Virus record (IMG/VR): IMGVR_UViG_3300028829_003504 | Span: 197,789-261,788 of that record | Direction: 5' to 3' (one strand) | Length of the DNA stretch: 64,000 nucleotides | Shown here: positions 40,846 through 64,000 of the stretch, in pieces | Numbering within the stretch: position 1 is the first letter of the stretch | Layout of the letters: the number at the start of each line of letters is the position of its first letter | The notes under the pieces: generated by a model | Told to the model about the DNA's origin: nothing | The model's input: only the letters and a program-made list of their open reading frames with translations | The model's database searches: none | Program-made: the position numbers and the translations under genes

Positions 40846-40935
40846 TATTTGCATGCCTCAAACATGTAATTTTTAGTATGATATCTTGAAGTGGGATATC
40901 TAAATTTAATTCTAAATAAATTAGGAGTACCCGTA

Positions 40936-46177: not shown

Positions 46178-47995
46178 ATGTTAAGCGAATCCGCTAAGTT
46201 TGAAAACTTAGACCAATTCAAATGGTACACCTATACAGGTCGTAATAAGAATCTGGTAGCAAGAAAGCATGAGAGACTATTAGTGAAAGGTGCCGTATAC
46301 GGCATGAAAGCCATTAGGGGTGATAAATTCTATATAGTCTTTCCTGAAGACTACCACATTGACTTTACGGTTACTAAGCGTGTAGGCCTTAATATATCTA
46401 AAAACTCTAAACTTAAGCGTAAGCCACCTCCACTGACTAATAACAAGGGAGAGGGAGGTCGTGCTTCTCGCACACTAGGGCCTAAAGGCCTTGGTAGAGT
46501 CCAAAAGGCCCAAGAGAAGTCTAAGTGGGATGCTACTTACTTCAAGCCGCAAGCTCGGGTAGGGGATGAATTGAAGAACGGTATAAGTTTCGAGAATTAC
46601 CAATGGCGTAATTTTACGGACATAACTCCCATTAGGAAGCGTAATGGTACCAAGGTTGTTCACTCATTCCCAAAGAAGTCTATTGTAGGTGTCCGCTTCT
46701 TACGTGATAGTAAAGGAGCTAAACTAGTTACTACTGATGGTAAAGTACTTACTATAAGTAAAGAGCAGTTTGATATGGTACTTAACGCATCGAAAGTAAT
46801 GCCTAAGAATAAATGGCCTGAAGGGACCATCTCTGTTGAAGAAATGGCTGAGAACCTTCAGTACGAAAAAGAATCGGACAAGGCCCGACGCATTTCTGAT
46901 AGAAACCTAGCCAGAGCCGATAACGAAGCAGCTAGGCGTGAAAAGAAGAATCAGGAGCGTAAGAAGAGACGGGAGGATCAAGAAGCCATTAGGTCCGAAC
47001 GCGAGAGATTGAAGCGAAGACTTGAGGGCCGTAAGAAAGAAGTCAATCTTACTATGAAACCTAAGACCAGTAAAGAGCTTGCGGATATATTAGTGCAGGG
47101 TAAAAAGCCTAAAGAGGACGAGGGCGTATTATCTGATATGGATCTGCAAGAGAATCTAGACGCCCTTAAGCAGATGGACTTGGATTCAGATGATACTCAG
47201 GACTACGATGACGAAGAGTCTGGAGGGGAAGGTGGTACTTCTAATGACTTCGATGATAGTGACCTGTCGGACGCAGATATGCCTGACCCTGAAAACCGTG
47301 ACTTCGATGATAACGAATCCGATAAACTTATGGACGACCTTGACGAATTAATCGAGCAGCGACACGAGCAGGCATTTAGTTTAGGTGACCTTGACGGCGA
47401 AGACGAAGAGGAAGACCTTGACGAAGAGGAAGACCTTGACGAAGAGGAAGACCCGGACGAAGAGGAAGACCCGGACGACCTTGACGAAGAGGAAGACCCG
47501 GACGACCTTGACGAAGAGGAAGACCCGGACGACCTTGACGAAGAGGAAGACCTTGACGAAGAGGAAGACCCGGACGACCTTGACGAAGAGGAAGACCCGG
47601 ACGAAGAGGAAGACCCGGACGTCGCTATTGCTGAGGAGGAGCTAGGAGAAGAAGGAGAAGAGGAAGACCTGGACGAAGAAGGTGACTCTAATCCTAAAGA
47701 CTATGTATCAGAAGAAGGTGACGTGGTTTTATTCCTAAGTGATGATAGCGATAAACGTGAGTACGTACTACTTGACATATTCCCACTACCTGCAAACAAT
47801 AACATCACTGTGTATAAGGTGTACGATGTAACCAACAAGCCTGACGTGTTCAATACTGTCCGTGTAGCAAAAGGCTCTCGTAATAAGTTTGAGAATATGG
47901 TTAAGTTCCTGCGCAAAATGAATCCAAAAGAATATAGTGGCTACTATACCTCAGCCGAACTTATGGATAGGTCTAAGAGTCCTATTAACAGCTAA
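46178..47995 (+). CDS. putative internal virion protein with basic N-half and acidic repeat region
   Basis: Starts MLSESA; DEEEDL/DEEEDP repeats. Confidence 0.65.
   Translation: MLSESAKFENLDQFKWYTYTGRNKNLVARKHERLLVKGAVYGMKAIRGDKFYIVFPEDYHIDFTVTKRVGLNISKNSKLKRKPPPLTNNKGEGGRASRTLGPKGLGRVQKAQEKSKWDATYFKPQARVGDELKNGISFENYQWRNFTDITPIRKRNGTKVVHSFPKKSIVGVRFLRDSKGAKLVTTDGKVLTISKEQFDMVLNASKVMPKNKWPEGTISVEEMAENLQYEKESDKARRISDRNLARADNEAARREKKNQERKKRREDQEAIRSERERLKRRLEGRKKEVNLTMKPKTSKELADILVQGKKPKEDEGVLSDMDLQENLDALKQMDLDSDDTQDYDDEESGGEGGTSNDFDDSDLSDADMPDPENRDFDDNESDKLMDDLDELIEQRHEQAFSLGDLDGEDEEEDLDEEEDLDEEEDPDEEEDPDDLDEEEDPDDLDEEEDPDDLDEEEDLDEEEDPDDLDEEEDPDEEEDPDVAIAEEELGEEGEEEDLDEEGDSNPKDYVSEEGDVVLFLSDDSDKREYVLLDIFPLPANNNITVYKVYDVTNKPDVFNTVRVAKGSRNKFENMVKFLRKMNPKEYSGYYTSAELMDRSKSPINS
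47402..47620 (+). repeat. coding tandem array of 18-bp units with 9-bp GACGACCTT inserts
   Basis: GACGAAGAGGAAGACC(TT/CG) about 12 times, encoding DEEEDL/P. Confidence 0.95.
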
Positions 47996-48003
47996 ACTGT
48001 AAG
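47994..48003 (+). promoter_or_regulatory. AAACTGTAAA motif
   Basis: Upstream of ligase; near-copy TACTGTAAAT at about 48013. Confidence 0.5.
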
Positions 48004-48052
48004 GATTCCTTATACTGTAAATCACGTATTATGCGAATTACGGAAGTATACT

Positions 48053-50014: not shown

Positions 50015-50023
50015 GGTACACTA

Positions 50024-50470
50024 ATGGACATATTTGTTTCAAATAACCAAACACTAGACAGCGCCTTCGAGTCCCATTTAATAAAGGATGCGGAGCGTAT
50101 GAGCAGGAACAAAAGGAGTCGTGAGACTTTAATTTATCTTAATCCAAAGGACTTTCTAAAACTAGCGGAAGGAGTAAGGCACTATGACGAAGCTAAGCAC
50201 GATACGGTAAAAGGGGTCTTATCTAGAGGTGAGAGCTTCGACGCACTTCCCTACCTAAAGACTAAATTAATCAATGGCCGTGAGTTTAAGGTGACAGGTC
50301 ATGAGGGTCGTCATCGTAGTATTTACTTACATCAAAAGTTCCCTAATAAACTAATACCGATTAGACTTATAGATTCATCAATGCGTTGGGGTGAAGACGG
50401 TCTAAGTAATTCTGAGATTACTCTAGAAGCCGAATCTTCTAGACTCAGAATTAACGTAATAGTTCCTTAA
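50024..50470 (+). CDS. hypothetical protein with ParB/Srx-like motif
   Basis: LPYL...VTGHEGRHR; N-terminus MDIFVSNN. Confidence 0.45.
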   Translation: MDIFVSNNQTLDSAFESHLIKDAERMSRNKRSRETLIYLNPKDFLKLAEGVRHYDEAKHDTVKGVLSRGESFDALPYLKTKLINGREFKVTGHEGRHRSIYLHQKFPNKLIPIRLIDSSMRWGEDGLSNSEITLEAESSRLRINVIVP

Positions 50471-50485
50471 GGCAGAGGATTTAAC

Positions 50486-51646
50486 TTGATACTTATGAAT
50501 GGGATACTCCTAGGGACTTTAATCGCACTGCATGGAATTCTAGCAGTAGGACTAGGTGTATTGTTAAATGGCGATTTAATAAAAGCAAAATCATTAAGGC
50601 AGTTTCAGTTATACTTCGTATCTGTAGCCTTAACTTGGACAGTTCTTTATTTAAAAGGTCCAATCGTACAAGAAGGATGGATAGGTACACTAGGGTATTT
50701 ACCTTTCTTTCTGAGTTATATACTTCTATTAGCGGCAGTATGTTTACATGCAGGACATAAAGCACCTGTTAGACGGAGTCTTATAGCATCTGCGTTAATT
50801 GCCTTCTATCTAGCCTTACTATACTGCTCACGAAGTTCAGTAATACATATTACGGATATGTATCAAGTATTAGCTTTAGGTTATTGTTGGAATCTATGTA
50901 GATTGAGGTATGAAAGGACGCATAACATCGGAGACCATTACCTATCTAACTTTATGTTACTTGGCATCATTACTTTAAGTGCCCGAACTCTGTATGTTTA
51001 TGTTAACGGGAACCTCGGATCGGGTTTTGTATACACAGCCGTAGCATTTACATTAGTTAACGTAGGTATATGCTTATCTATAATGGCTAGTTACTTCCTA
51101 GAAGTAAAAGTGGCTCTTGAGAAACAGGCAAATACGGATAGTCTCACAGGAGTGTATAATCGACGGTACTTTACGTCTAGCTTGGAGCAAACACACGCGT
51201 CCTGTAAGAGACGCAATTCCACATACTCTATTATTATTTGTGATATTGATTTATTTAAGAATGTTAATGATACTTATGGTCATATTTGTGGAGACTTAGC
51301 TTTAATTAAAGTCGCTCGATGCTTAGACAAAATTAAAAGATGCGAGGATACCCTATCTAGGTATGGAGGAGAGGAGTTTGTATTTCTGCTTCCTGATACA
51401 AAGCTTGAAGAGGCTACTAAGTTGGCTGAACGCTTCCGTCGCAAAGTAGCGGATCTGACAATCGACCTGGGTCAGAAGTCCCTATCATTGACCATGAGCT
51501 TTGGAGTAGCCGGAGTGTACGGTATGTCGGATCCCTCTGATGTAGTCGGAGACGCGGACATAGCCCTTCTGTATGCTAAAGGTGACGGAAGGAATGGAGT
51601 CTATTACTCGGATCGTGGAGTGCTTCATTCAGGAAAGACCCTATAA
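50486..51646 (+). CDS. membrane-bound diguanylate cyclase (multi-TM plus GGDEF domain)
   Basis: About 7 hydrophobic segments; ANTDSLTGVYNRR, CDIDLFKNVNDTYGHICGD, RCED I-site, SRYGGEEF, TMSFGVA, ADIALLYAK..GRN; start may be ATG 50495. Confidence 0.95.
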   Translation: MILMNGILLGTLIALHGILAVGLGVLLNGDLIKAKSLRQFQLYFVSVALTWTVLYLKGPIVQEGWIGTLGYLPFFLSYILLLAAVCLHAGHKAPVRRSLIASALIAFYLALLYCSRSSVIHITDMYQVLALGYCWNLCRLRYERTHNIGDHYLSNFMLLGIITLSARTLYVYVNGNLGSGFVYTAVAFTLVNVGICLSIMASYFLEVKVALEKQANTDSLTGVYNRRYFTSSLEQTHASCKRRNSTYSIIICDIDLFKNVNDTYGHICGDLALIKVARCLDKIKRCEDTLSRYGGEEFVFLLPDTKLEEATKLAERFRRKVADLTIDLGQKSLSLTMSFGVAGVYGMSDPSDVVGDADIALLYAKGDGRNGVYYSDRGVLHSGKTL

Positions 51647-51671
51647 GCACCTTGTTCTAGGAACATAATAA

Positions 51672-51700
51672 ACCTTGCTGTGTTCACATGGCGAGGTCTT
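51672..51700 (+). terminator. probable terminator after DGC
   Basis: ACCTTGC ... GCGAGGT stem followed by CTTT. Confidence 0.45.
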
Positions 51701-51755
51701 TGGTATCTAATGTCAATAATTGGTACCAAATTTAACCTTTTTAGTAGGACATAAT

Positions 51756-54485: not shown

Positions 54486-54494
54486 GGAATCTGT

Positions 54495-56024
54495 ATGGGT
54501 ATATCATTAACTCGAAATAACTACACCTCACTACAGAAGATGGTGCACGACGTCCATCAGGACTTGGTTGCGGGAGGATTTAAGCTTATTCTACAAAGAG
54601 ACGCAATTGAAATGGAGGATGACTCTATGGTTATTAGTCCTGAGATTGTGGAGGTAGCGCCTGACTGGACTAAAGCAGGATTATATGTGTTTGAGGCAAG
54701 TCCTTCTGTTGATCCTTTTGCCGTATATGAGCCTTACAACATAGTGTTTATGGTTCATAGGAAATGGTGGAAGGTATTCGTATGCACTCCAGTAGGTTTA
54801 ATCTACGACACGTTCAATGACACGTTCTCCGTAGAGTCCTACACAGATGAATACTGGCCGTTCGCAAGCATAGGGGAAGACCAGCAAAGATGGGTAGGTG
54901 CCTTAACCGTAGACGGCGTATCTTCCGACACAGGGATCGGACAGCAATTTTTAAGCTTCCATAGCGAGTTTTCTACATGGCCATCTTTAAGACAGAATGC
55001 AGTAGACGAGCACGGAGTATTAGAGTTAGAATCGTCCCCTCTAAGTTACAGAATTACAGTAGAGGCACATGGCATTGTATTTTGCACATGGGCTGAAAAC
55101 ATGGATGATAGAGGAGATTGCCATTCTTGGTTTTGCATACAGCGACCTAAACAGTCAGACGGTGAAATATTACCCTATACGGGTAAGCATCCGCTGTGGT
55201 GTGTATACTCTCAAAATGGTGGCGGGAATCCTAATGATATGTCAGCCTTTCCTTCAATGGATGTAAACGGTATAAGACAGTTCGTTGTCAGAGAGCGTGA
55301 CATAGATTTACCTAGCCACAGTTGTAGTGCTGTACTGGGAGAAGGTGAGCACTCAGCCATAATAAATCCTATGGAGCAAACCAGCTTACAGGAGGACGGA
55401 ACGTACTTACTTAATATACCTAGCGGCTTGAACTCATGGAGATATGTATATCCTTACTTATTGGATTTAATTGCATTCTCAAGCGCAGACCTATCCGCTC
55501 ACGGTTATAATGTAACACATGACGTATTTGGTAATGGCGAACCTATTACATACTACGCTATGAAAGCCAATAGACCTGAGAACAGAGGCATGAGGATGTT
55601 CATGAAAGGACCTGATGTTAATGCTGCGGACGAGCAAGAGCCTTTCGAAGTACCTTTATACTTTTACGTACGTCACCTTTTCCGTGCAGCTACAGAATCT
55701 AACGTGATGCCTCTAATATTTGTAGAAATTGAATTAATGGAAGGCGTTACTTCTACCAGCTACCCTGCACCTAGGGATATAGAAATACCTTTCACTATAG
55801 ATCCTAGTAGCACTGCGTTAGAGGGAATTGATTACGTACTAACCTCACATAATAACCATATACTTATTCCTGCAGGCAGCACTAAAGGTAGACTATACGG
55901 ACAGATACTTCCGCGATCAGGAGATAATGGTACGAGGTCTGTGACGTTTATACTAACAGATAACCTAGGTGAAGGTAACTTACTAAGTAGTCCTATATTC
56001 ACCATACAAGACAGTATTGTCTAA
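54495..56024 (+). CDS. paralog family copy 3 with C-terminal Calx-beta-like domain
   Basis: Family motifs as in 39784 and 40936, plus TALEGIDY...LIPAGST...RSVTFIL. Confidence 0.7.
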   Translation: MGISLTRNNYTSLQKMVHDVHQDLVAGGFKLILQRDAIEMEDDSMVISPEIVEVAPDWTKAGLYVFEASPSVDPFAVYEPYNIVFMVHRKWWKVFVCTPVGLIYDTFNDTFSVESYTDEYWPFASIGEDQQRWVGALTVDGVSSDTGIGQQFLSFHSEFSTWPSLRQNAVDEHGVLELESSPLSYRITVEAHGIVFCTWAENMDDRGDCHSWFCIQRPKQSDGEILPYTGKHPLWCVYSQNGGGNPNDMSAFPSMDVNGIRQFVVRERDIDLPSHSCSAVLGEGEHSAIINPMEQTSLQEDGTYLLNIPSGLNSWRYVYPYLLDLIAFSSADLSAHGYNVTHDVFGNGEPITYYAMKANRPENRGMRMFMKGPDVNAADEQEPFEVPLYFYVRHLFRAATESNVMPLIFVEIELMEGVTSTSYPAPRDIEIPFTIDPSSTALEGIDYVLTSHNNHILIPAGSTKGRLYGQILPRSGDNGTRSVTFILTDNLGEGNLLSSPIFTIQDSIV

Positions 56025-56090
56025 ACATACAATCCCGACAGGACAAGGATGATGTAGGGTTAAGGACGACCCGCTACTAAAAGGCTATTT

Positions 56091-57221
56091 ATGAAAATCG
56101 CTATATATGCAATATGTAAGAACGAGCAGCATAACATTGTTTCATTTTTAAAAAATACAATGTATGCAGACACTATAATAATAACCGACACAGGTAGTAC
56201 CGATGATACCGTACGGATATTAGAAGAGCAATCTTTGATTAATTCTAAAATTGTACTACATAAGGCTGAATTTGAACCCTTCTCATTCTCAGGCGCCCGT
56301 AACTTCTGTCTAGCTCAGGTACCTGAGGATATAGATTACTGTTTATATTTAGACTTAGATGAAAGACTTGAGGAGGACTGGCTTAAGAAGTTAGAGCCTC
56401 TATTGGCACATCAGCCTACCCACATCACTATGGACATGGTAACTTCTCGTGATGAATCAGGTAACGTAGCTTCCTCTTATTACCAAACACGATGCCATAG
56501 ACGCGAAGGATATAGATGGCGTTACCCTTGCCATGAAGTCTTGCAGTGCGAATGGACTAATGGTGACAAACGTACTATAAGTAGTGCCATACAAGTAGAG
56601 CACTATCCTACGTTAGATAAAGAACGTAACTACTTGGGTTTACTGGAGCAAGGCGTAGTCGAATACCCAAACGACCAACGTATGCTTTATTATTACGGCC
56701 GTGAGCTTTACATGGCCAAGAACTATCTTGACGCGATAGCTGCGCTAGACAAAGCCTGTTATGCGACAGAACTTTGGTGGGATAGACAAACTGCATCCTG
56801 CTTTAAGTATATGGCCTTATGTGCCGTAGAGCTGAAAGACCATAAGTTGGCTGAAACTTACTATTTAAAGTATTTAAGCTACAGTACGGATGAGGCTGAA
56901 TCGTGGTACGAAGTAGCCATGTTCTACTACTCCCAAGGGCTCTACCACTTGGCTTTAGGTTATTCAAAAAGATGTATAGATTTAGGTCAATCTAAGACAA
57001 AACCTAGTAATTTCTTATTTAGAGACTTGAGTTGCTGGACATGGAAACCCCATGATTTAGCAGCTTACTGCTCCTACCATCTTAAAGATAGTTCTGGATA
57101 TGCAGCACATGCCACACTGGCTTGTAACCATAATCCTCAGGATGGGCGTCTACAAGCTAATATGGAAGACGCACTCAGGAATGTTACAGTAGTAAAAAGG
57201 ACCGTGGATGAAGATACTTGA
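56091..57221 (+). CDS. GT2 glycosyltransferase with C-terminal TPR repeats
   Basis: ICKNE, DTGSTDDT, FSGARN, LDLDE (DxD), HEVL; YYYGRE and TPR-like helices. Confidence 0.9.
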   Translation: MKIAIYAICKNEQHNIVSFLKNTMYADTIIITDTGSTDDTVRILEEQSLINSKIVLHKAEFEPFSFSGARNFCLAQVPEDIDYCLYLDLDERLEEDWLKKLEPLLAHQPTHITMDMVTSRDESGNVASSYYQTRCHRREGYRWRYPCHEVLQCEWTNGDKRTISSAIQVEHYPTLDKERNYLGLLEQGVVEYPNDQRMLYYYGRELYMAKNYLDAIAALDKACYATELWWDRQTASCFKYMALCAVELKDHKLAETYYLKYLSYSTDEAESWYEVAMFYYSQGLYHLALGYSKRCIDLGQSKTKPSNFLFRDLSCWTWKPHDLAAYCSYHLKDSSGYAAHATLACNHNPQDGRLQANMEDALRNVTVVKRTVDEDT

Positions 57222-58380
57222 TATAAGACCTACATCTGAATCTGCCGATAAGCCTCCAGGCTGGTGGATTAGGAAAGGCAAAGGCTCTAGACAAGCCTAC
57301 ATTAAACGGCATCCTAAATCTAAATGGTCTAAGTTTTTAGAATACGGGTTGAAGTCAACTAAGCCTCAATCTAGTAAGAAGAAACCTAGCCCTGCAGGAA
57401 AGGGTACTAAGGATAAGCCTGTTGCTTCTGGCAAAGGTAGCTCCACAAAGAAAAAAATTAATGAAGTTAAAGGTAAAGCTAAACTAAAGGTCTCTCGCTC
57501 GAAAAGAATTAAAGAGATGGCCTCCAAAAAGGCGCCTTTAATTGCAAGTAACCTAAACAAAGGTCTAAATAAACTTGTCACTAAAGCTCCTGCTTATGCG
57601 TCTAAGATAAAAGACAGTATAAGTAAAGCAACTTCTAGCAAGGTGGGTAACTTCTTTAAGAAGAAACTTACCGGTGGAGAAGTAGACGAAGCCGAAAAAG
57701 AGGCAGTTATATCGACACTAACACCTGTGTTGAAGGCTGTCTTAGGTGTCGCAGTACTTGGCGCTTTGGCTGTCGGTGCCGCACCATTGGTAGCCGCTCT
57801 TGCTAATACCTATTCCTCCTCACTGGATAACCTTATGACCTCAGAGTCCTCTGAGTTAAACACCGATGAACCCGTGGATTTACTTATCCATGATTTCATG
57901 CGTTGGTTTAGTAAGATAGATAAGAATGTATTAGCTGAGAAGATAGCAGAGCTACAAGTCCTCGAGGAATTCGGGGAGGGTGAAGCCGAAGAATCCGAAA
58001 CTTCTGTAGAAGGCGACGAAGAAGACCCTGATTTTACATCGGAGTCTGCCGTCGTTAAACGGGTTTCGTTCAGAGTCTCTCCTCTACAGCGTAGAGTTGT
58101 TGCTAACTTAAGAACTAAGTTCGAAGTGATTTTCGATAAAGAGGTCGTAGGTCATATTGAGTCCGACCCTAAGATTAAAGGTGATGGTTTCCAGAACCGA
58201 TGTTGGGTTGTGACGCTACGCGATGGTTTTAATGAATCGTCGTATACGAGTGGATATAGATCAGACGAACCTTTTACCTCCGTCAGGGGTGATGACGTGT
58301 TGCTGAGAAATCCACAAAGAATGACAATGCCAGAAGCTCGAGGATGGGTAAAAGGCGCACTAGTAAGGAGTTTCCTTTGA
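57208..58380 (+). CDS. putative virion protein with three SES[A/S] motifs and a hydrophobic helix
   Basis: RPTSESAD, MTSESSE, FTSESAV; basic N-half. Confidence 0.65.
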   Translation: MKILDIRPTSESADKPPGWWIRKGKGSRQAYIKRHPKSKWSKFLEYGLKSTKPQSSKKKPSPAGKGTKDKPVASGKGSSTKKKINEVKGKAKLKVSRSKRIKEMASKKAPLIASNLNKGLNKLVTKAPAYASKIKDSISKATSSKVGNFFKKKLTGGEVDEAEKEAVISTLTPVLKAVLGVAVLGALAVGAAPLVAALANTYSSSLDNLMTSESSELNTDEPVDLLIHDFMRWFSKIDKNVLAEKIAELQVLEEFGEGEAEESETSVEGDEEDPDFTSESAVVKRVSFRVSPLQRRVVANLRTKFEVIFDKEVVGHIESDPKIKGDGFQNRCWVVTLRDGFNESSYTSGYRSDEPFTSVRGDDVLLRNPQRMTMPEARGWVKGALVRSFL

Positions 58381-59039
58381 AACGACTAAATATTAATATT
58401 ACAACTACCGATGTTTTTCATCCAGTAGATAAGCTAGGTACCTTTGATAGATCACAACTACGTACCTTATTCCTACAACTTAATGCCGTTGCTTCCACTG
58501 CGGCAGATTGCGCTGAGCAATGCCAATCAATACCTAATGACTTAGTCGAACTGGGTTTAGATGATTTAGACGTATCGCCCCCGCACTTACGCAACTACTA
58601 CGAGCGAGTGGAGGCCGAAGCAGTTTCATTAAGTGACGCCGTGGCTAATCGCTTACAGGCTTCGGCCTCCACTGCTCACATGCAAGACGGTTTTGTGCGA
58701 CATCAGTTCTATAAAGCATTTGAAATAAGTAATAAGTTTGGATCTAATCAGTATAGTGGTATTAGATCTAGAGTACTTGACGCTATAGATAACCTACCTG
58801 TTACAGGTTTAGGGCACGACGACAGTACAGTAGAGGTAGCCTCATATAGTCCTTGTACACCAAGACCTGAACCTGCCCACGCTAAGTACTCGGCCTTGGT
58901 ATCTACTGCCGTTGTACTAGAAGCGTTCAATACGGCCTTACGTAAGTTTAAGGCCGTAGCGGTTGCTTCGCTGGACATGCCTTGCGATCAAGGTATTCAC
59001 GATGAAGCTAAAGCACTGTTGTACGGAGCTGAATTATAA
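58377..59039 (+). CDS. hypothetical (putative virion) protein
   Basis: TTG 58377 after AAGGAG, overlapping upstream TGA. Confidence 0.6.
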   Translation: MKRLNINITTTDVFHPVDKLGTFDRSQLRTLFLQLNAVASTAADCAEQCQSIPNDLVELGLDDLDVSPPHLRNYYERVEAEAVSLSDAVANRLQASASTAHMQDGFVRHQFYKAFEISNKFGSNQYSGIRSRVLDAIDNLPVTGLGHDDSTVEVASYSPCTPRPEPAHAKYSALVSTAVVLEAFNTALRKFKAVAVASLDMPCDQGIHDEAKALLYGAEL

Positions 59040-59827
59040 TGAAGTCAATTACTGTAGGCCGTCCTCAGCATAGATTCTCAAGTGAGGCCTTTGATGTAGG
59101 TTCATTGGCCCCTGCTACCGAAATGCTTGATGCTAGTAGAACATCGAAATCGATACAATTAAAGCCTGAAATTACTGGTGGCCAATCTGTTGACCTAGAC
59201 GTTAACGCTTGGCTTCCAATGGCCTCGGAAGTATATAACATAAGTCCTGATATTAGAGACTATGTTCTTGCTCCCATCCCAGCCATGATTACAGGTATGC
59301 CGAATACGAATGGTGACAGTGCGACGACAAGAGAAATGTTACGCTTTCAACCAGACCATGGTATGCCGAGCTACAAAACGTTTAAGGGTAAACCTACTCA
59401 CGTTGAGCATAACAATAAAGATTATACGATTGCTAAAGGTATTATCTTTGACAGTTACTTGCAACGTCTGCCTCAGTTTAAAGGCGACCACGCCAGATTA
59501 ACATTGCTATTAGGATTTGATCGCAGACGCGACCCAGATTTAGCAAATGCCATCGCAGCTAATAAAATAAACACATATAGCATAGGTATGTTCTTTAATT
59601 CCTATCGCTGCTCTATATGTAGTCATGTAGTGCAGCAAGGTACGATGCACATGTGTAGTCATACCCGACCACGCAGACCGACTTACTTGCATGATAGCGG
59701 TGTTCTTTCTTACCGAGAATGTCAGAATATAGTTGGCTTTGAATGTAGTTCTGTAGGAGACCCTGCCTATGTATCAGCCCATCATAACCCCGACCAGGTC
59801 ATAAACGTCCAAGACTTTAGGAATTAA
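59039..59827 (+). CDS. putative prohead (maturation) serine protease, HK97 gp4/assemblin-like
   Basis: NTNGD, FKGKPTHVEHN (His), YSIG (Ser), FECSSVGDPA; CSIC...CSH Zn insert. Confidence 0.7.
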   Translation: MKSITVGRPQHRFSSEAFDVGSLAPATEMLDASRTSKSIQLKPEITGGQSVDLDVNAWLPMASEVYNISPDIRDYVLAPIPAMITGMPNTNGDSATTREMLRFQPDHGMPSYKTFKGKPTHVEHNNKDYTIAKGIIFDSYLQRLPQFKGDHARLTLLLGFDRRRDPDLANAIAANKINTYSIGMFFNSYRCSICSHVVQQGTMHMCSHTRPRRPTYLHDSGVLSYRECQNIVGFECSSVGDPAYVSAHHNPDQVINVQDFRN

Positions 59828-59829
59828 TC

Positions 59830-60138
59830 ATGGCAGAAATATTTGCAAAGAAACAGGAAAGCGAGAGTGCCAATGTAGGCGGTAAACGTGTAGAGAAAGC
59901 AATCACAAAACTGTTCAACGACAACGGAGGTAACGGGGAAGACTTAATGTTTGACCTAGCCGACTATTTCATAGTTGACGCACCCTTCAATGAACTTAAA
60001 CGCTTGAAGACCACTCTGTTAGGCCGAGTAGCTTTAGGTCTTATCTTGAAAGAAGAATTCTACAACGATGAACTTCTTGAAGACCAGCCTCGAGCACGGC
60101 GTACAGCCCTAGCTGAACTGGGTTTCCCAAGAGGTTAA
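59830..60138 (+). CDS. small putative head protein (QESESAN)
   Basis: 102 aa; N-terminal SESA. Confidence 0.65.
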   Translation: MAEIFAKKQESESANVGGKRVEKAITKLFNDNGGNGEDLMFDLADYFIVDAPFNELKRLKTTLLGRVALGLILKEEFYNDELLEDQPRARRTALAELGFPRG

Positions 60139-60139
60139 T

Positions 60140-60381
60140 ATACAAATATTCATAAGTGAGTCAGCCTCTGTGGAATCTCTGATAAAGCAGAAGGCCAATA
60201 AAGCAATAAAGCAGTTGTTGAAGAAGAACCAATTTGAGGTTCTAAATGACAATGACGTTAGCATTGACGTAACTGATTATCCTCAAATGACTTCTACGTA
60301 GGCGTTGATGGACTAAGCTTCACGGTGAAAGTTAAAGTACGTAAGCCTATGGAGATGCCCAAACGAACTGTAAACTTATAG
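60140..60381 (+). pseudogene. disrupted small gene of the IFISESA family (ATA in start position, -1 shift near 60287)
   Basis: IQIFISESASVESLIKQK...PQMTST* (60140-60301); -1 frame continues NDFYVGVDGLSFTVKVKVRK...VNL* to 60381. Confidence 0.5.
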
Positions 60382-60546
60382 TATAGCCAAATCTTAAACG
60401 TTCGTATTGTATATCATACGAACATTGAAGGAGGTGGGCCCACGTCTCCCAGACTACTACCTCTGGGTAATAAAAATGTAGTAGAGCGATGTCTCGGCCC
60501 TCCTAATAAGAGGGCTTCCTTAATTAAATTGGAGTGGTATGTGAAC
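60371..60546 (+). repeat. structured intergenic element, long copy
   Basis: Collinear with 60944-61027 apart from two insertions (12 nt and about 80 nt) and a few substitutions. Confidence 0.85.
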
Positions 60547-60581
60547 CCACCCATCATAATCCAAAACTTTAGGAATTAACT

Positions 60582-60959
60582 ATGAAAGTTATATTAGTAA
60601 GCCAGTCATCCGTTAAAATGGAAAACAACGCTATCGTCATATTCGGCAGACGCGGTAAGAAGATTGCAGAAGAACTGAAGGCAGTAGCTGACTTAAGTAA
60701 GAAAGTTAAAGGCTCAGTTCCTATGATGGATACTGACATAATGAAAGTAGTAGGACTTCTGCAGGTAAGCAAACAGAAAATTGCAGAGATACCTGCGGAT
60801 AACTTAAAAACATTACGTGACTACGGCCCTAAATTGCTTTCCTACTGCAAGATGTATAAGAAATTAAATGCAGCCTCTTATGAACGTGACGATTGGTTAA
60901 AAAGTGCAGGTAAGAGTAAATCGCAAATAGGCAATATAAGCACTAAACTTAGAGTATAG
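60582..60959 (+). CDS. small protein (MKVILVSQSS)
   Basis: 125 aa, AGGA RBS. Confidence 0.75.
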   Translation: MKVILVSQSSVKMENNAIVIFGRRGKKIAEELKAVADLSKKVKGSVPMMDTDIMKVVGLLQVSKQKIAEIPADNLKTLRDYGPKLLSYCKMYKKLNAASYERDDWLKSAGKSKSQIGNISTKLRV

Positions 60960-61027
60960 CCAAATCTTAAACGTTCGTACGGACATTGAAGGATGGCTTC
61001 CTTAATTAAATTGGAGTGGTATGTGAA
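60944..61027 (+). repeat. structured intergenic element, short copy
   Basis: TAAACTTAGAGTATAGCCAAATCTTAAACGTTCGTACGGACATTGAAGGATGGCTTCCTTAATTAAATTGGAGTGGTATGTGAA. Confidence 0.85.
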
Positions 61028-61034
61028 ACCTATT

Positions 61035-61478
61035 ATGATAGCACTTAGCGCAGGGTTGCACTTTGATGATTTTGTACGCGGGTCATTCAAAGCAGAAACA
61101 ATAGAAAAAGAAGGCAGTGCATTAGTCTTCACCACCACTCTAGTCGGCAAGGCAACTAAAGCCCCTGACTATAAGAAGAACCAGCTTATACGGAACTTCT
61201 TAATTAAACTAGGTGAGTGGACTCAAGCCCATCTAGATGAATTACATTCACAGGGTATTAAAGAAATACGAGTATCACCTATAGTAGAAGACCTTATGGG
61301 TAGACTACGAAGAACATCAGGTAGCTCTAGATTCTACTTGAACAGCAAAGAGACTTCGTTTCATATTGTTGTTGGTAAAAACTACTTATTACTATCTGTT
61401 CCTGAGAAGAAAGTCAGCACGATTGACAACAAGGCACAGCTAGCCAATCTACGTAACATATTAAAGGGTAACACCTAA
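61035..61478 (+). CDS. small protein (MIALSAG)
   Basis: ATG 61035 preferred because the 60993 start lies inside the repeat element. Confidence 0.6.
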   Translation: MIALSAGLHFDDFVRGSFKAETIEKEGSALVFTTTLVGKATKAPDYKKNQLIRNFLIKLGEWTQAHLDELHSQGIKEIRVSPIVEDLMGRLRRTSGSSRFYLNSKETSFHIVVGKNYLLLSVPEKKVSTIDNKAQLANLRNILKGNT

Positions 61479-61819
61479 TGAAAATCTTTATAAGTCAAAG
61501 CGGTACTGGTACTCCTAAGAACATAGCTAAACTTTTAACAGGCCGTGAAGCGGAGCAGATTACACAAGCATTGAAAGTAGTTAAGAAGGACTTAGCCCTT
61601 ACCTTTACTCAAAGGGGTACTCCTAACGTATACGTACCTAATCGTGACGTTCAGAGTTTAGAGCAAGACTTTTTGATTGAAATCTTCGAAACCGAAAATA
61701 GACATAAGAATCTGGGTTTGATGACCGACTCTAAAGATAGAAACATATTCTACATAGTAGATGCCGATACTGACGAAGCCTCGCCTCGTAGGTTAGGCGC
61801 TCTATTCACTAAGGCTTAG
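61478..61819 (+). CDS. small protein (MKIFISQSG)
   Basis: 113 aa, TAATG coupled. Confidence 0.75.
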   Translation: MKIFISQSGTGTPKNIAKLLTGREAEQITQALKVVKKDLALTFTQRGTPNVYVPNRDVQSLEQDFLIEIFETENRHKNLGLMTDSKDRNIFYIVDADTDEASPRRLGALFTKA

Positions 61820-61827
61820 GAGCTATC

Positions 61828-62844
61828 ATGAAGAAAGTAGAATTTCTAAGGTTCCAGTGGTACGTATACTTACAATCTAAGCCCGTCGCACTGAATGACA
61901 TACATGGTACTGACGGAGAAGAATACGACATTGATGTAGACCGTAAAGAGAAGTTTGGATTACACTTCGACGGTAAGAAGTATTGGTTCATGATGGACGA
62001 CCCTCTAGATGTAGCCTTTGAGATAGATAAGCATAACGCTGAACTGCTAACAAAGAACAGTCGTGGCTTTACAGGCAAGATTGGAGGCAAGGTAGTTGTT
62101 AAAGGAGGTGACTTTGCCTCTCTTGATAAGAAGCCTAATGGTACTGGTCCTGCTAGAGGAGACTCTGACAAAGGTCCTAAACGCTCTGGTGTAGGTGTTA
62201 CTAAAGTGATTAGTTACGTACAGAAATCCCTTAATGCACGACCTAAGCCTAAGCAAGTTAAGATTAGTTTACGTGCCGTTGAAGAAGACGTTAAGTTCAC
62301 TTTCGGTTTATCACACCCACCTAGCCAAGCTATATGGGATATGGTTAAAGAAGCTGAACCTTACCTAGGGTTAAAGATTAAAATCAATACTGACGTGGTT
62401 CTTATTTGTGAAAGCGAGAAAGTACCTACTGCATTGATAACTACCTTTAGTAAGAAGCTCGGTCGTAAAGCAATCTACATTAACTTGACGCCTAGTGAGT
62501 TAGCATCTATCAGTCATACAGGTAGAGTTGACCCCGCCCAGTGTGCAGCAGCCATTACCCATGAGCTTGCCCATTACGTGTATCACGAGGCTATTCGCAA
62601 TTCAGATCTAAGGAAGTGGAAACTTGAAGTGGCTGCGTTGAAATTTCACGCAGACCAATATAACCACGGTCAAGGTTATCCCTGGCATGATGAACACTTT
62701 GCGATGCTTTGTGAGCATATGGTCCATGGCCATTCAGCCCGTAGGTTAAATTCTACAATAGGATTAGGTATTGCGGAAAAGTACTTCGATAATGTCTTTT
62801 TGAAAGGCGATGAAAACAGTAAACTATATCCACCTAAGAAGTAA
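61828..62844 (+). CDS. putative Zn metallopeptidase (HExxH) with N-terminal beta domain
   Basis: AITHELAHYV, downstream DEHFA; AGGAG RBS. Confidence 0.7.
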   Translation: MKKVEFLRFQWYVYLQSKPVALNDIHGTDGEEYDIDVDRKEKFGLHFDGKKYWFMMDDPLDVAFEIDKHNAELLTKNSRGFTGKIGGKVVVKGGDFASLDKKPNGTGPARGDSDKGPKRSGVGVTKVISYVQKSLNARPKPKQVKISLRAVEEDVKFTFGLSHPPSQAIWDMVKEAEPYLGLKIKINTDVVLICESEKVPTALITTFSKKLGRKAIYINLTPSELASISHTGRVDPAQCAAAITHELAHYVYHEAIRNSDLRKWKLEVAALKFHADQYNHGQGYPWHDEHFAMLCEHMVHGHSARRLNSTIGLGIAEKYFDNVFLKGDENSKLYPPKK

Positions 62845-62852
62845 ACTGTAAA
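62843..62852 (+). promoter_or_regulatory. AAACTGTAAA motif
   Basis: Overlaps upstream stop, precedes endonuclease leader. Confidence 0.5.
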
Positions 62853-62859
62853 GCATAAC

Positions 62860-62942
62860 CAACTAGTTAGGGACAGGGCCGGCCAGCCTTTCAAAGAACC
62901 CTTTATTCTGAGATTACCTACTAGTTGTTTTCTATAAAGGGT
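62860..62942 (+). promoter_or_regulatory. RBS-sequestering leader structure
   Basis: ACCCTTTAT 62898-62906 / ATAAAGGGT 62934-62942 covers the AAGGG RBS; CAACTAGT 62860-62867 / ACTAGTTG 62920-62927 is a crossing helix. Confidence 0.5.
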
Positions 62943-62948
62943 AGAACT

Positions 62949-63785
62949 ATGTCAAAATCAAATAGACTACAAGAATTCAATTCTTGGCTGGTCTCTAAAC
63001 CGAACATCACTATCGTAGGTGATATCCCCAATAAAGCTTGGACTAAGGTGACTCTGACCTGTTCAGACCATGCGTTTACTTGGAGTACAAGTCCCGGTAA
63101 CATAAGACCTGATCGTATAGGCTGTAAGCACTGCGCCTCGAATAAATTCATAAAGCCTTTCTGGACTAAATACAATTCACTAGAACACCTACGCATAATT
63201 AAAGGGGTGCCTTTAAAGGGCTCTGATTCAATTACGTTCCACTGCACTAAGCACGAACATGTTTGGGACATGACAGTACAATCATTTGCTAGGTGGAAAC
63301 ACGGATGTAAGCTCTGTGCCCAAGAAGCTAGTATATCGTCATCTAACGGTTATACTAATTGGAAATCAGTTAGACTGGGCGACACCTGTGTTAAAGTTCA
63401 CGGGTACGAAGACCACGCCATTCGCTATGTGCTAAGTAAGAACATTAAAGCCAATGACCTTCTAGTTCACGGTTCTCATAAAGTACCTACTATTCGCTAC
63501 AACGGCAATAGAAACTATTTCCCGGACTTGTTTATACCTAGTATGAATCGCATAGTTGAAGTTAAATCTTTGTATACTCTAGGCTTCAACCTTAGGGCGA
63601 CTACTGAGGATTCTATATTTAGAGGTAAAAGACGATTCGACAATCTTTTACAGAAACGTCTAGCAGTTCGCCAATCTGGCTTTAAGTTTAAGCTATTGGT
63701 TTTTAACAACGCAGGAGCGTTAATAGGGCTACCTAAGAAATGGTGGACTTATTCATACTCTGACCTTAAACAAACATTTACATAG
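62949..63785 (+). CDS. putative homing endonuclease: two Zn-finger repeats plus PD-(D/E)xK nuclease
   Basis: CxxH...W...GCxxC x2; YFPDLFIPSMNRIVEVKS. Confidence 0.65.
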   Translation: MSKSNRLQEFNSWLVSKPNITIVGDIPNKAWTKVTLTCSDHAFTWSTSPGNIRPDRIGCKHCASNKFIKPFWTKYNSLEHLRIIKGVPLKGSDSITFHCTKHEHVWDMTVQSFARWKHGCKLCAQEASISSSNGYTNWKSVRLGDTCVKVHGYEDHAIRYVLSKNIKANDLLVHGSHKVPTIRYNGNRNYFPDLFIPSMNRIVEVKSLYTLGFNLRATTEDSIFRGKRRFDNLLQKRLAVRQSGFKFKLLVFNNAGALIGLPKKWWTYSYSDLKQTFT

Positions 63786-63793
63786 GATCTAAT

Positions 63794-64000
63794 ATGAAAG
63801 TCTTTGTGTCTAATAGTGGGGAGGTTAGAGTATTACCTTTCCCTAAAATACAAAACTATAATCAAGCGTTACGTTTAGCTAAGACACTAGCACCTCGCTT
63901 ACCTGAAGTTAGAGTGGATATATCACCTGACGTATTAGTTAAGGCCGCCTTTGATATAGCACAGATTGTTCAGGCACTATCTAGATTCGTTGACGATAGT
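63794..64000 (+). CDS. protein starting MKVFVSNSG, truncated by window end
   Basis: AGGA RBS, ATG 63794, frame open to the end. Confidence 0.7.
   Translation, partial: MKVFVSNSGEVRVLPFPKIQNYNQALRLAKTLAPRLPEVRVDISPDVLVKAAFDIAQIVQALSRFVDDS

What the first reader, a model, noticed from the sequence alone, without database searches (positions are those of the whole stretch)
46178..64000. Shared N-terminal S-x-S-[A/S/G] leader motif on otherwise unrelated proteins clustered around the prohead protease: candidate capsid targeting/cleavage code
Seen in sequence: MLSESA (46178), MKILDIRPTSESA plus internal TSESS and TSESA (57208), MAEIFAKKQESESA (59830), IQIFISESA (60140), MKVILVSQSS (60582), MKIFISQSG (61478) and MKVFVSNSG (63794). 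Variants are MIALSAG (61035), MDIFVSNN (50024), and internal KISISA (4681) and VSTSSA (8344). Beyond the leader these proteins share no visible similarity, and several have a hydrophobic beta-like M-K-[IV]-[FI]-[ILV] stretch before the motif. Established: T4 gp21 and phiKZ gp175 cleave head proteins at short motifs ending in Glu, and T4 internal proteins carry an N-terminal capsid-targeting sequence. Inference: this phage uses a Ser-based code (cleavage after S-x-S?) read by the 59039 protease, and the small genes form a variable array of head-packaged, possibly injected, effectors.
Basis: partly seen in the sequence, partly recalled or inferred. Interest (0 to 1): 0.8.

Follow-up and report, generated by a model that had tools for sequence, protein, structure and literature searches.

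The report
Serine-motif leader on phage head-module proteins
Many unrelated proteins encoded beside the capsid-maturation protease of this giant phage and its relatives share a short N-terminal tag ending in Ser-x-Ser-Ala, which most likely marks them for trimming, and perhaps loading, during capsid assembly, much like the tag-and-cut system of phage T4.

Summary
In the window, 6 of the 20 proteins encoded at 46-64 kb carry S-x-S-[ASG] within their first 12 residues (0.23 expected; 0 of 2000 shuffles reach 6). None of the other 40 proteins does.

It replicates in relatives at about 50-60% protease identity (Phage NCTB, Erwinia/Dickeya jumbo phages, metagenomic contigs):
- Arrays of BLAST-unrelated genes next to the protease start M-K-I-x-[IVL]-...-S-x-S-A.
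- The scaffold-position protein carries 7-21 internal copies.
- The major capsid protein often has the motif at the junction between propeptide and mature domain.
- In the 57208 family, three sites keep their positions inside unalignable, low-confidence (probably disordered) linkers.
- The domain after the third site is a separate gene in other clades.
- Ser codons switch between AGY and TCN, so selection acts on the peptide.

Best reading: a removable leader and processing signal, hydrophobic-x-[S/A]-x-S-[A/S/G], read during head assembly, probably by the 59039 protease. This is a Ser-based counterpart of the T4 capsid-targeting sequence and of the phiKZ S/A/G-x-E code.

Cleavage, the scissile bond, packaging and injection are all inferred, not shown. 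An adjacent invariant HExxH metallopeptidase (61828) is a rival enzyme. I found no description of this motif in the literature searched.

The parts
46178..47995 (+). 605-aa protein with leader M-L-S-E-S-A (motif at nt 46184-46195), followed directly by a KMPT-N domain, then an acidic repeat region.
   Evidence: Pfam KMPT-N, E = 4.7e-12, residues 14-67. Orthologs keep the motif just before the domain: Yoloswag MHSLSAT, L098 VALSAKFE, NCTB LLSISAR, L093 LESVSV.
57208..58380 (+). 390-aa multi-site protein. Motif copies at residues 10-13 (nt 57235-57246), 212-215 (nt 57841-57852) and 278-281 (nt 58039-58050). It has a basic N-terminal part, a hydrophobic segment around residues 170-205, and a C-terminal globular domain from residue 283.
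   Evidence: All three sites are conserved in position in NCTB, L093, L096 and L098, inside otherwise unalignable linkers (A6). phrog_31537 starts at residue 283. That domain is a separate gene in L045, L100, L039 and Lu11. AF2 gives low pLDDT at 1-12, 208-220 and 258-281.
59039..59827 (+). Head maturation (prohead) serine protease, the candidate reader of the motif. Its own N-terminus has S-E-A-F at residues 16-19, where relatives have S-x-S-F.
   Evidence: phrog_18299, E = 3e-95. AF2 pLDDT 85.5, with residues 1-16 of low confidence. BFVD fold hits to prohead serine proteases, COG3740 and phage G gp19. H124 and S181 are invariant. N-terminal S-x-S-F in relatives.
59830..60138 (+). 102-aa protein with a 14-residue leader ending E-S-E-S-A (nt 59860-59871). 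It is the first gene after the protease.
   Evidence: Weak paralog of the 60140 product.
60140..60301 (+). 54-codon frame beginning I-Q-I-F-I-S-E-S-A (motif at nt 60155-60166). It has an ATA at the start position with a Shine-Dalgarno 5 nt upstream. It is either a gene with a non-canonical start or a decaying paralog.
   Evidence: Residues 15-53 match the leader-bearing genes that follow the protease in L092 (1339) and L098 (10751).
60582..60959 (+). 125-aa protein, leader M-K-V-I-L-V-S-Q-S-S (motif at nt 60600-60611).
   Evidence: No homolog in the fetched loci.
61035..61478 (+). 147-aa protein, variant leader M-I-A-L-S-A-G (A-x-S-A, nt 61041-61052). The ORF formally opens at 60993.
   Evidence: Ortholog L092:2412 (E = 1.4e-12) starts MMTISISLN. 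60992-61030 belongs to an intergenic DNA repeat.
61478..61819 (+). 113-aa ORFan, leader M-K-I-F-I-S-Q-S-G (motif at nt 61493-61504).
   Evidence: Only itself was found among 5.8 billion proteins. No lead from the protein atlas.
61828..62844 (+). 338-aa KMPT-N plus HExxH (T-H-E-L-A-H-Y) putative zinc metallopeptidase. It has no leader. It is the rival candidate enzyme.
   Evidence: Homolog of Yoloswag gp141 and NCTB BN7874_226. HExxH is invariant in all 26 distinct full-length homologs. KMPT-N E = 1e-30 in Yoloswag gp141 but only 0.16 here.
63794..64000 (+). Gene cut by the window end (75 aa in full on contig L003). Leader M-K-V-F-V-S-N-S-G (motif at nt 63809-63820).
   Evidence: Ortholog L092:4862 starts MLPISISMS (E = 5e-8).
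50024..50470 (+). 148-aa protein starting M-D-I-F-V-S-N-N. It looks leader-like but lacks the second Ser. Membership is doubtful.
   Evidence: No homologs. L098 has a leader-bearing gene (MKLVLNLKTLESTSA) at the same position after the ligase.
56091..57221 (+). GT2 glycosyltransferase with TPR repeats, conserved in the head module. It is relevant only to the rival reading of the motif as a glycosylation sequon.
   Evidence: Pfam Glycos_transf_2, E = 5e-12, plus TPR. Homologs in 43 loci, including clades that do not use S-x-S.

Best explanation
The motif, in full hydrophobic-x-[S/A]-x-S-[A/S/G], is a proteolytic processing signal of virion assembly.

At N-termini it closes a short, removable, beta-strand-like leader (M-K-I-x-[IVL]-...). 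That leader tags a changing set of otherwise unrelated proteins encoded around the prohead protease. Internally it sits in flexible linkers of multi-domain head proteins: the 57208 family, the scaffold-position protein, and the major capsid protein junction in relatives.

The 59039 prohead serine protease most likely binds the extended motif and cuts in or just after it. That would remove leaders, separate domains and dismantle the scaffold inside the procapsid. By analogy with the T4 capsid-targeting sequence, the leader may also bring its cargo into the prohead.

Shown: the motif's existence, its enrichment, its positional conservation, selection at the peptide level, and its location in linkers.

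Inferred: cleavage itself, the enzyme, the scissile bond (after the first Ser, or after the second Ser with small residues at P3 and P1), and packaging.
For: 1. N-terminal enrichment in the window: 6 observed against 0.23-0.73 expected, and 0 of 2000 shuffles reach 6.
2. Independent replication: motif starts peak at residues 6-10 in 1455 proteins of 114 related loci.
3. 114 leader-bearing proteins fall into 56 BLAST families when only the protein body is compared.
4. The closest relatives carry leader-gene arrays between the protease and the scaffold-position gene. L098 has four adjacent genes that all start MKIKVFVSES on unrelated bodies. L092, L093, L096 and NCTB show the same pattern.
5. 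In L098 the leader codons differ at synonymous sites and the upstream DNA is unrelated. In the window, Ser codons use both the AGY and the TCN box. Selection is therefore on the peptide.
6. In the 57208 family, three sites are conserved in position within unalignable linkers. All three fall in low-pLDDT segments just before ordered parts. The domain after site 3 is a free-standing gene in L045, L100, L039 and Lu11, starting 2-3 residues after the motif.
7. The scaffold-position 'ATPase' has 7-21 copies per roughly 680 aa. In NCTB it is the most motif-rich protein of the genome.
8. In 119 MCP representatives, S.S[ASG] occurs 0.5 times per sequence in the 28-aa propeptide/mature junction bin, against 0.06 or less in any later (mature-part) bin; two upstream propeptide bins have 0.13-0.19. 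55 of 119 have it at the junction. PaBG MCP loses about 20% of its mass on maturation (PMC7412058). The PDB chain of phage G MCP starts at the position aligned to Yoloswag residue 75 or so, next to HSESS(66-69) and SVSA(73-76).
9. The proteases of relatives carry S-x-S-F just after a low-confidence N-terminus, which could be an autoprocessing site.
10. Genome-wide in NCTB, 5 of 7 strict leaders lie in the 26-kb head/tail-tube region, where 0.67 are expected (p = 0.0006).
11. Precedent: phiKZ S/A/G-x-E and SPN3US A-x-E with Ser at P1' leave N-terminal propeptides on head and ejection proteins (PMC13282480, PMC10052503).
Against: - There is no proteomic or biochemical evidence for cleavage in this phage or in any relative. 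The only virion proteome read here (PaBG) gives no cleavage sites.
- The window phage's own MCP could not be recovered, so its maturation site is unknown.
- Some leaders would leave propeptides of only 5-9 residues.
- One leader family (MLILLSESARK in the Erwinia clade, MLISLSAA in NCTB) is encoded between tail-tube genes, not head genes.
- MCPs of PaBG- and Lu11-type phages lack strict S-x-S at the junction, although those clades have some MKIxISLS leaders.
- The centre residue and the fourth residue vary a good deal, so the motif is loose. Many internal matches in ordinary proteins are background.
- The fold search ties 59039 to prohead proteases only at TM 0.4-0.5 beyond its own clade.
Confidence: 0.6

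Rival explanations
1. The motif is a processing signal, but the enzyme that reads it is the KMPT-N/HExxH metallopeptidase encoded at 61828 (Yoloswag gp141 family), not the serine prohead protease.
For: - The gene is conserved in the protease's gene cluster in the window, L092, L098, the NCTB-like contigs and the whole Erwinia/Dickeya clade: immediately downstream in the Erwinia/Dickeya clade, a few genes downstream elsewhere. These are the clades with the strictest S-x-S usage.
- T-H-E-L-A-H is invariant in all 26 distinct full-length homologs.
- Several leader proteins carry the same KMPT-N domain right after the leader.
Against: - M-K-I-x-I-S-L-S-type leaders, S-x-S-F at the protease N-terminus, and motif-rich scaffold-position proteins also occur in clades with no detectable homolog of this peptidase: L045, L052, L077, L084, L103.
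- The distribution follows phylogeny, so the correlation carries little weight.
- No family assignment reaches the curated threshold. M48 and SprT matches have E > 0.1.
Confidence: 0.12
2. The motif is functional but not a cleavage site. It could be a docking tag, for example a beta-strand that pairs with scaffold, portal or protease to recruit cargo. Or it could be a sequon for a modification of Ser, such as O-glycosylation by the conserved GT2-TPR enzyme at 56091, or phosphorylation.
For: - The alternating hydrophobic/polar leader (K-I-x-I-S-L-S) looks like an amphipathic strand.
- A GT2 glycosyltransferase with TPR repeats is conserved inside the head module.
- The two Ser residues are the invariant positions.
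Against: - The position pattern fits processing sites better than modification sites. Copies sit at extreme N-termini, at domain boundaries that are gene boundaries in other clades, and at the MCP propeptide junction. There are also many copies in the scaffold-position protein, which in other phages is destroyed rather than decorated.
- The glycosyltransferase is equally present in clades that do not use S-x-S.
- Docking and cleavage are not exclusive. The T4 targeting sequence does both.
Confidence: 0.15
3. There is no shared function. The N-terminal similarity reflects common start-of-gene composition (M-K-I is frequent in AT-rich genomes), a first beta-strand of unrelated folds, and chance matches to a loose four-residue pattern picked post hoc.
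For: - The pattern is short and degenerate.
- Genome-wide in NCTB, the number of strict N-terminal matches (7) equals the composition-based expectation (about 6.8). The signal there lies only in their clustering.
- The tail sheath family gives a conserved but probably unrelated match, NGSSTSAG.
- The small window proteins are too short for sensitive homology tests.
Against: - 0 of 2000 shuffles reach the observed number in the window.
- There is a sharp positional peak at residues 6-10 in independent loci.
- The motif is conserved at aligned positions while its flanks diverge.
- Identical ten-residue leaders sit on unrelated bodies, with synonymous codon differences.
- The motif is concentrated at the MCP junction.
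Confidence: 0.05

Closest known systems
Phage T4 capsid targeting sequence (CTS) on internal proteins IPI-III, Alt, gp67 and gp68, removed by the gp21 prohead protease at L/I-x-E
   Same: A leader of about 10 residues is shared by unrelated proteins and ends in the protease's motif. The same motif cuts the scaffold and the major capsid protein. Cargo genes are variable between related phages. (My own knowledge; Mullaney and Black 1996 is cited in PMC10052503.)
   Different: - The conserved residues here are Ser-x-Ser-[A/S/G] after a hydrophobic residue, not Glu at P1.
- The leader is beta-strand-like (M-K-I-x-I-S) and shows no sequence similarity to the T4 leader.
- The cargo genes sit in an array directly next to the protease.
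- No match to a solved structure, T4 gp21 included, was found for the protease.
- Packaging and cleavage are untested.
phiKZ gp175 and SPN3US gp245 prohead proteases, with S/A/G-x-E (A-x-E) processing of head, inner-body and ejection proteins
   Same: This is also a jumbo-phage setting. Many head proteins have N-terminal propeptides and multi-site propeptides. P3 is small (Ser/Ala/Gly), and SPN3US prefers Ser at P1'. The protease also cuts itself (PMC13282480, PMC10052503).
   Different: - The phage lineage differs: jumbo subgroup 2.2, the Lu11/PaBG/NCTB/Erwinia Y3 group (PMC7824862, PMC7412058).
- Glu is common at the centre of the motif but dispensable. L, V, I, M, T, N, Q and H also occur there.
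- If the S-x-S register matches S-x-E, then P1 has changed from Glu to Ser.
HK97-type prohead serine proteases (MEROPS S78, COG3740) and herpesvirus assemblin
   Same: BFVD fold hits include 'prohead serine protease', COG3740, XkdF and phage G gp19, at probability 1.0. His and Ser are invariant. Assemblin cuts at (V/L/I)-x-A|S, that is a hydrophobic P3, a small P1 and Ser at P1' (my own knowledge). That pattern resembles hydrophobic-x-S|x-S.
   Different: - TM-scores beyond the protein's own clade are only 0.4-0.5.
- There is no PDB match.
- The protein has a Cys-x2-Cys...Cys-x-His cluster that I do not know from those enzymes.
- HK97 has no leader-tagged cargo array.
Staphylococcal phage 80alpha capsid and scaffold N-terminal leader, shared with ribosomal protein L27 and removed by the host Prp cysteine protease
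   Same: A short hydrophobic N-terminal leader is shared by several assembly proteins and is cut just before Ala followed by basic residues (my own knowledge). Here the residues after the motif are also enriched in Arg and Lys.
   Different: The leader sequence, the enzyme class and the host group all differ. No Prp-like gene was seen here.

Membership tests
Prohead (head maturation) serine protease, HK97 gp4/COG3740-like: the 59039 product | Sequence or profile match to a curated head-protease family | tested here: met
   phrog_18299 'head maturation protease', E = 3.4e-95, full length. No Pfam family at E <= 0.01.
Prohead (head maturation) serine protease, HK97 gp4/COG3740-like: the 59039 product | Protease fold shared with known prohead proteases | tested here: inconclusive
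   The AF2 model has pLDDT 85.5. BFVD hits include phage G gp19 (E = 2e-12) and many 'prohead serine protease'/COG3740 models (E 1e-5 to 1e-7, TM 0.35-0.5). No solved structure matches at E < 1, and sequence search of the PDB finds nothing.
Prohead (head maturation) serine protease, HK97 gp4/COG3740-like: the 59039 product | Conserved catalytic Ser and His | tested here: inconclusive
   H124 and S181 are invariant in 31-34 homologs down to 29% identity. Their equivalence to the catalytic residues of a solved protease was not established.
Prohead (head maturation) serine protease, HK97 gp4/COG3740-like: the 59039 product | Gene located in the head module, upstream of the scaffold and major capsid protein genes | tested here: met
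   In Yoloswag, Lu11, phiRSL1 and NCTB the order is protease, scaffold-position 'ATPase', virion protein, MCP. In the window the downstream part lies beyond the contig end.
T4-type capsid targeting sequence / prohead-protease propeptide system | Short N-terminal leader shared by proteins that are otherwise unrelated | tested here: met
   56 BLAST families among 114 leader-bearing proteins. Identical MKIKVFVSES on four unrelated L098 proteins. Window proteins are unrelated beyond the leader, except the 59830/60140 pair.
T4-type capsid targeting sequence / prohead-protease propeptide system | The leader ends in the same motif that marks maturation sites of the scaffold and the major capsid protein | tested here: met
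   7-21 copies in scaffold-position proteins. The motif is concentrated at the MCP junction in 55 of 119 representatives. The sites are predicted, not mapped.
T4-type capsid targeting sequence / prohead-protease propeptide system | The leader is removed by the prohead protease | not testable with these tools
   This needs N-terminomics or in vitro cleavage. No such data were found for this clade.
T4-type capsid targeting sequence / prohead-protease propeptide system | The leader is sufficient to load cargo into proheads, and the cargo is present in virions | not testable with these tools
   The only hint is PaBG virion protein gp83, encoded next to the scaffold-position gene, which starts MLIKINLLEA (Table 1 of PMC7412058).
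T4 gp21 / phiKZ gp175 Glu-specific cleavage code | Glu at P1 of every site (L/I-x-E or S/A/G-x-E) | tested here: not met
   The centre residue is Glu in only 24% of N-terminal copies and 14% of internal copies. Many conserved sites have no Glu at all: SLSA, SVSA, SISA, SQSG, SHSG.
Sec or lipoprotein signal peptide | Hydrophobic core of 7-15 residues before a small-x-small site, or a lipobox Cys | tested here: not met
   The leaders have 3-6 hydrophobic residues and no Cys, read directly from the sequences.

The most novel reading that the evidence does not exclude
A whole lineage of jumbo phages (subgroup 2.2: NCTB, Erwinia/Dickeya 'hairy' phages, this marine or aquatic phage) uses a prohead protease whose recognition code has moved from Glu at P1 to small Ser/Ala residues. 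It is paired with a portable 8-14-residue beta-strand leader (M-K-I-x-I-S-x-S-A). That leader loads a fast-evolving array of cargo proteins into the capsid for delivery into the host. This would be an independent, Ser-based counterpart of the T4 internal-protein system.
Probability: 0.3. Interest if true: 0.75.

Novelty: new variant of a known kind. Interest (0 to 1): 0.62.

Why it matters
If the motif is the processing and targeting code of this lineage, sequence alone would predict three things:
- the mature ends of capsid, scaffold and internal proteins in dozens of poorly annotated jumbo phages;
- which ORFans are virion cargo, and therefore candidates for early-acting, possibly anti-defence, proteins;
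- how the specificity of the prohead protease family can drift from Glu to small residues.

A short portable leader would also be a practical tag for loading foreign proteins into large capsids, as the T4 sequence has been used. The claim can be tested directly by mass spectrometry on cultivable relatives (Erwinia and Dickeya phages).

Tried and rejected
- DNA similarity of 57-63 kb to known phages: no match. The phage is known only from metagenomic contigs.
- Recovering the phage's own major capsid protein failed. Three assemblies all end at or just after the window end. The viral-contig scan with an MCP alignment and the 5.8-billion-protein search with the Yoloswag MCP did not return a protein from the 262-kb contigs.
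- The first idea for the MCP site, that S-x-S replaces a T4-like I/V-x-E, was dropped. It rested on the alignment with Lu11 and PaBG. The larger MCP set shows the recurrent element is S/A-x-S/A-S/A a few residues before the conserved E-R-R-E start of the mature part.
It was redone with 4 sequences.
It was redone without them.
- PDB fold and sequence searches with the protease found nothing.
- Function of the small cargo proteins: no Pfam or PHROG family, no homolog of 61478, and no credible atlas lead.
- Literature on Yoloswag, Y3, AD1, PaBG, Lu11 and RSL1 gave no cleavage-site data. The phage G paper did not state the mature N-terminus.
- Rfam scan of the window: no family.

Full report
**What the window is.** All substantial ORFs lie on the + strand. 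The sequence belongs to a jumbo myophage of about 262 kb, known only from metagenomic assemblies. Three of those assemblies end at or within 314 nt of the window's end. It has no nucleotide-level relative among deposited phages. By protease protein identity its nearest named relatives are:
- Phage NCTB (51%);
- the Erwinia/Dickeya jumbo phages Yoloswag, Y3, AD1 and JA29 (46-51%).

These belong to jumbo subgroup 2.2, the Lu11/PaBG group of PMC7824862 and PMC7412058. Gene order around the finding matches NCTB and Yoloswag: giant protein, 46178 homolog, NAD-ligase, GT2 glycosyltransferase, 57208 homolog, protease, then the 61828 homolog. The 59039 product matches phrog_18299, 'head maturation protease', at E = 3e-95.

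**Checking the observation.**
- Every quoted string is present.
- Six of 60 window proteins have S-x-S-[ASG] starting within the first 12 residues, against 0.73 expected from shuffles.
- All six are among the 20 proteins of 46-64 kb, where 0.23 is expected. 0 of 2000 shuffles reach six.
- Fisher test against the other 40 proteins: p = 0.0008.
- Two further instances need qualification. The 60140 frame (IQIFISESA) opens with ATA, 5 nt after an AGAGG Shine-Dalgarno. It is homologous to the leader-bearing genes that follow the protease in L092 and L098.
- The 60993 ORF most likely starts at 61035 (MIALSAG). Its ortholog starts MMTISISLN, and 60992-61030 is part of a DNA repeat also found upstream of 60582.
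- 50024 (S-N-N) and 8344 (not conserved in NCTB) are probably not instances. 4681 (IKISISA at residue 53; NCTB has ITINLSSA there) is suggestive only.

**Replication in independent sequences.** The motif was chosen after looking at this window, so I tested it elsewhere.

I fetched 79 loci centred on the major capsid protein (MCP) from viral contigs. I fetched 30 loci centred on the protease from metagenomes. Over 1455 distinct proteins from 114 loci, motif starts peak at residues 6-10, at 9.1 per 1000 against about 2 per 1000 elsewhere. That is 66 observed against about 17 expected.

The closest relatives show arrays of leader genes between the protease and the scaffold-position gene:
- L098 (56%): MKINVMISESAG, then MKIKVFVSESAV, MKIKVFVSESSS, MKIKIFVSESSA, MKIKVFVSESAG.
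- L092 (60%): MKISVSAAK, MKIQVSMTSESAT, MLIQVKLTSESAT, MLPISISMS.
- L093 and L096: MKINLNLSSESAT, MNILISVSAP, MIITLNSESAG, MYIQILSESAR.
- NCTB: MKVFLSESK, MKIISISAR, MKIVSISAQ.

With the leader removed, 114 leader-bearing proteins fall into 56 BLAST families. The extended consensus has these features:
- a hydrophobic residue two positions before the first Ser;
- Glu (24%) or Leu (20%) at the centre;
- Ala (66%) at the fourth position;
- basic residues after it.

Looser M-K-I-x-I-S-L-S leaders occur across the wider group.

**Selection is on the peptide.**
- In the window, the Ser codons of the motif use both the AGY and the TCN box.
- In L098 the four identical ten-residue leaders differ at synonymous sites and have unrelated upstream DNA.
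- This rules out a DNA-level repeat or a cassette boundary as the cause.

**Internal sites behave like processing sites.** The 57208 family gives the clearest case.
- Its three copies (residues 10-13, 212-215, 278-281) align with S-x-S-[A/N/G] in NCTB, L093, L096 and L098. The surrounding acidic or basic linkers cannot be aligned and vary in length.
- In the AF2 model the low-confidence segments are 1-12, 48-94, 182-190, 208-220 and 258-281. Each site sits in a low-confidence (probably disordered) linker just before an ordered part.
- The C-terminal domain (phrog_31537) begins at residue 283.
- In L045, L100, L039 and Lu11 that domain is a free-standing gene whose product starts 2-3 residues after the position of the motif. 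Cutting at site 3 would therefore release the same unit that other phages encode separately.
- The protein at the scaffold position is labelled 'ATPase' in RefSeq. It carries 7-21 copies in about 680 residues in Yoloswag, Y3, AD1, L098, L093, L103 and NCTB. In NCTB it is the most motif-rich protein of the genome.

**The major capsid protein.**
- Across 119 MCP representatives, S.S[ASG] occurs 0.5 times per sequence in the 28-residue bin between the conserved propeptide block (..GE-I-NA..) and the conserved start of the mature part.
- The rate is 0.06 or less in any later (mature-part) bin; the two upstream propeptide bins have 0.13 and 0.19. 55 of 119 sequences have the motif at the junction.
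- In the Erwinia/Dickeya clade the junction reads G-x-[LI]-V-[HQ]-S-x-S-[SGA], with x being E, N, T, H, Q or V.
- Two observations place maturation near there. PaBG MCP loses about 20% of its mass (PMC7412058).
- Second, the deposited 280-residue chain of phage G MCP (6wkk_A) aligns from its residue 7 to Yoloswag residue 81, so its first residue corresponds to about residue 75. I could not verify that the deposited chain is the mature form.
- PaBG- and Lu11-type MCPs have A/S-x-A/S-S rather than strict S-x-S at this place. The wider rule may therefore be small-x-small.
- The window phage's own MCP lies beyond the contig end and was not recovered.

**The enzyme.**
- AF2 on 31 homologs gives a confident model: pLDDT 85.5, with residues 1-16 of low confidence.
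- It has no PDB match.
- It does match predicted structures of PaBG, phiRSL1 and phage G gp19, and then many 'prohead serine protease', COG3740 and XkdF proteins.
- H124 and S181 are invariant.
- Relatives carry S-x-S-F (the window has S-E-A-F; Lu11-type phages have A-x-A/G-F) exactly where the ordered part begins. This could be an autoprocessing site.

A second candidate enzyme is the 61828 product. It combines a KMPT-N domain with an invariant T-H-E-L-A-H motif. However, leaders and motif-rich scaffold-position proteins also occur in clades without it.

**Genome-wide control.** I fetched the whole NCTB genome. It has 328 ORFs.
- Strict N-terminal matches number 7, which equals the composition-based expectation of about 6.8.
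- Five of the 7 lie in the 26-kb head/tail-tube region, where 0.67 are expected (p = 0.0006).
- The signal is therefore specific to the virion module and is not a general property of N-termini.
- One leader family lies between tail-tube genes. That does not fit a purely capsid role.

**Interpretation.** The best-supported reading is a processing signal, plus a removable N-terminal leader, used in head assembly and most probably read by the 59039 protease. It is a Ser-based variant of the T4 capsid-targeting sequence with gp21, and of the phiKZ/SPN3US S/A/G-x-E system (PMC13282480, PMC10052503).
- The scissile bond is open. Cutting after the first Ser would mirror T4 and assemblin: hydrophobic P3, small P1.
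- Cutting after the second Ser would mirror phiKZ: small P3.
Its content differs in every relative, and it includes an ORFan.
- Packaging and injection remain inference.
- A 2026 review of jumbo-phage biology mentions only the phiKZ and SPN3US codes. None of the papers read on this clade reports cleavage sites. The motif therefore appears to be undescribed.

Noticed in passing
window 60371-60406 / 60944-60979 and 60510-60548 / 60992-61030: A two-part DNA repeat (97% and 95% identical) lies upstream of both 60582 and 61035. In the first copy the two parts are separated by a 103-nt GC-richer insert. That insert folds better than shuffles (z = -2.9) and matches no Rfam family. It could be a promoter or 5' leader element, or a remnant of a duplication.
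   Followed up: partly
window 60136-60170: The 60140 frame has a good Shine-Dalgarno (AGAGG) and a complete leader, but ATA in place of a start codon, one base after the TAA stop of 59830. It is either a rare non-canonical start or a freshly inactivated paralog of 59830.
   Followed up: partly
window 61828-62844: A putative zinc metallopeptidase with an invariant T-H-E-L-A-H motif and an N-terminal KMPT-N domain. It is conserved next to the prohead protease in several clades. Its role in head assembly is unknown. Small proteins with a KMPT-N domain but no HExxH are its paralogs, for example the MLILLSESARK family between the tail-tube genes.
   Followed up: partly
window 50486-51646: A membrane-anchored GGDEF diguanylate cyclase (Pfam E = 6e-44, hydrophobic N-terminal half) is inserted in the virion module. 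No homolog was found in any related locus, so it is probably a recently acquired host-manipulation gene.
   Followed up: no
window 57208-58380 versus L045:3882-4241, L100:9666-10013, L039:4107-4454: The C-terminal domain of the 57208 family is a separate small gene in other clades (gene fusion or fission). The window protein also has a transmembrane-like hydrophobic stretch around residues 170-205.
   Followed up: yes
window 47360-47692: A long in-frame array with 9/18/27-nt periodicity encodes an extremely acidic E/D/L/P repeat (EEDLDEEEDPD...) inside the 46178 protein.
   Followed up: no
window 39784-40845, 40891-42096, 54495-56024 (and 32127-33782): Three paralogs match a 'tail sheath' PHROG (phrog_12249), in addition to the canonical sheath at 32127. 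Relatives such as Erwinia phage Y3 are described as having hair-like tail appendages.
   Followed up: no
window 62925-63785 and the window end (L003:14983-15276): An HNH/DUF7487 endonuclease gene sits inside the leader-gene array. Three independent assemblies end at or within 314 nt of the window end, just after a terminator-like hairpin with a T-run. This may be a genome terminus or a repeat that breaks assemblies.
   Followed up: partly
window 22576-23496: A QueE-like radical SAM gene. NCTB also encodes QueD and GTP cyclohydrolase I, which hints at 7-deazaguanine modification of the phage DNA.
   Followed up: no
L008:2266-3954 (PaBG gp84) and homologs in L036, L042, L046, L079: The phage-type topoisomerase I of PaBG-like phages starts M-H-[IT]-S-L-S-A-V. 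This is a leader-like N-terminus on a DNA enzyme and might mean that it is packaged.
   Followed up: no
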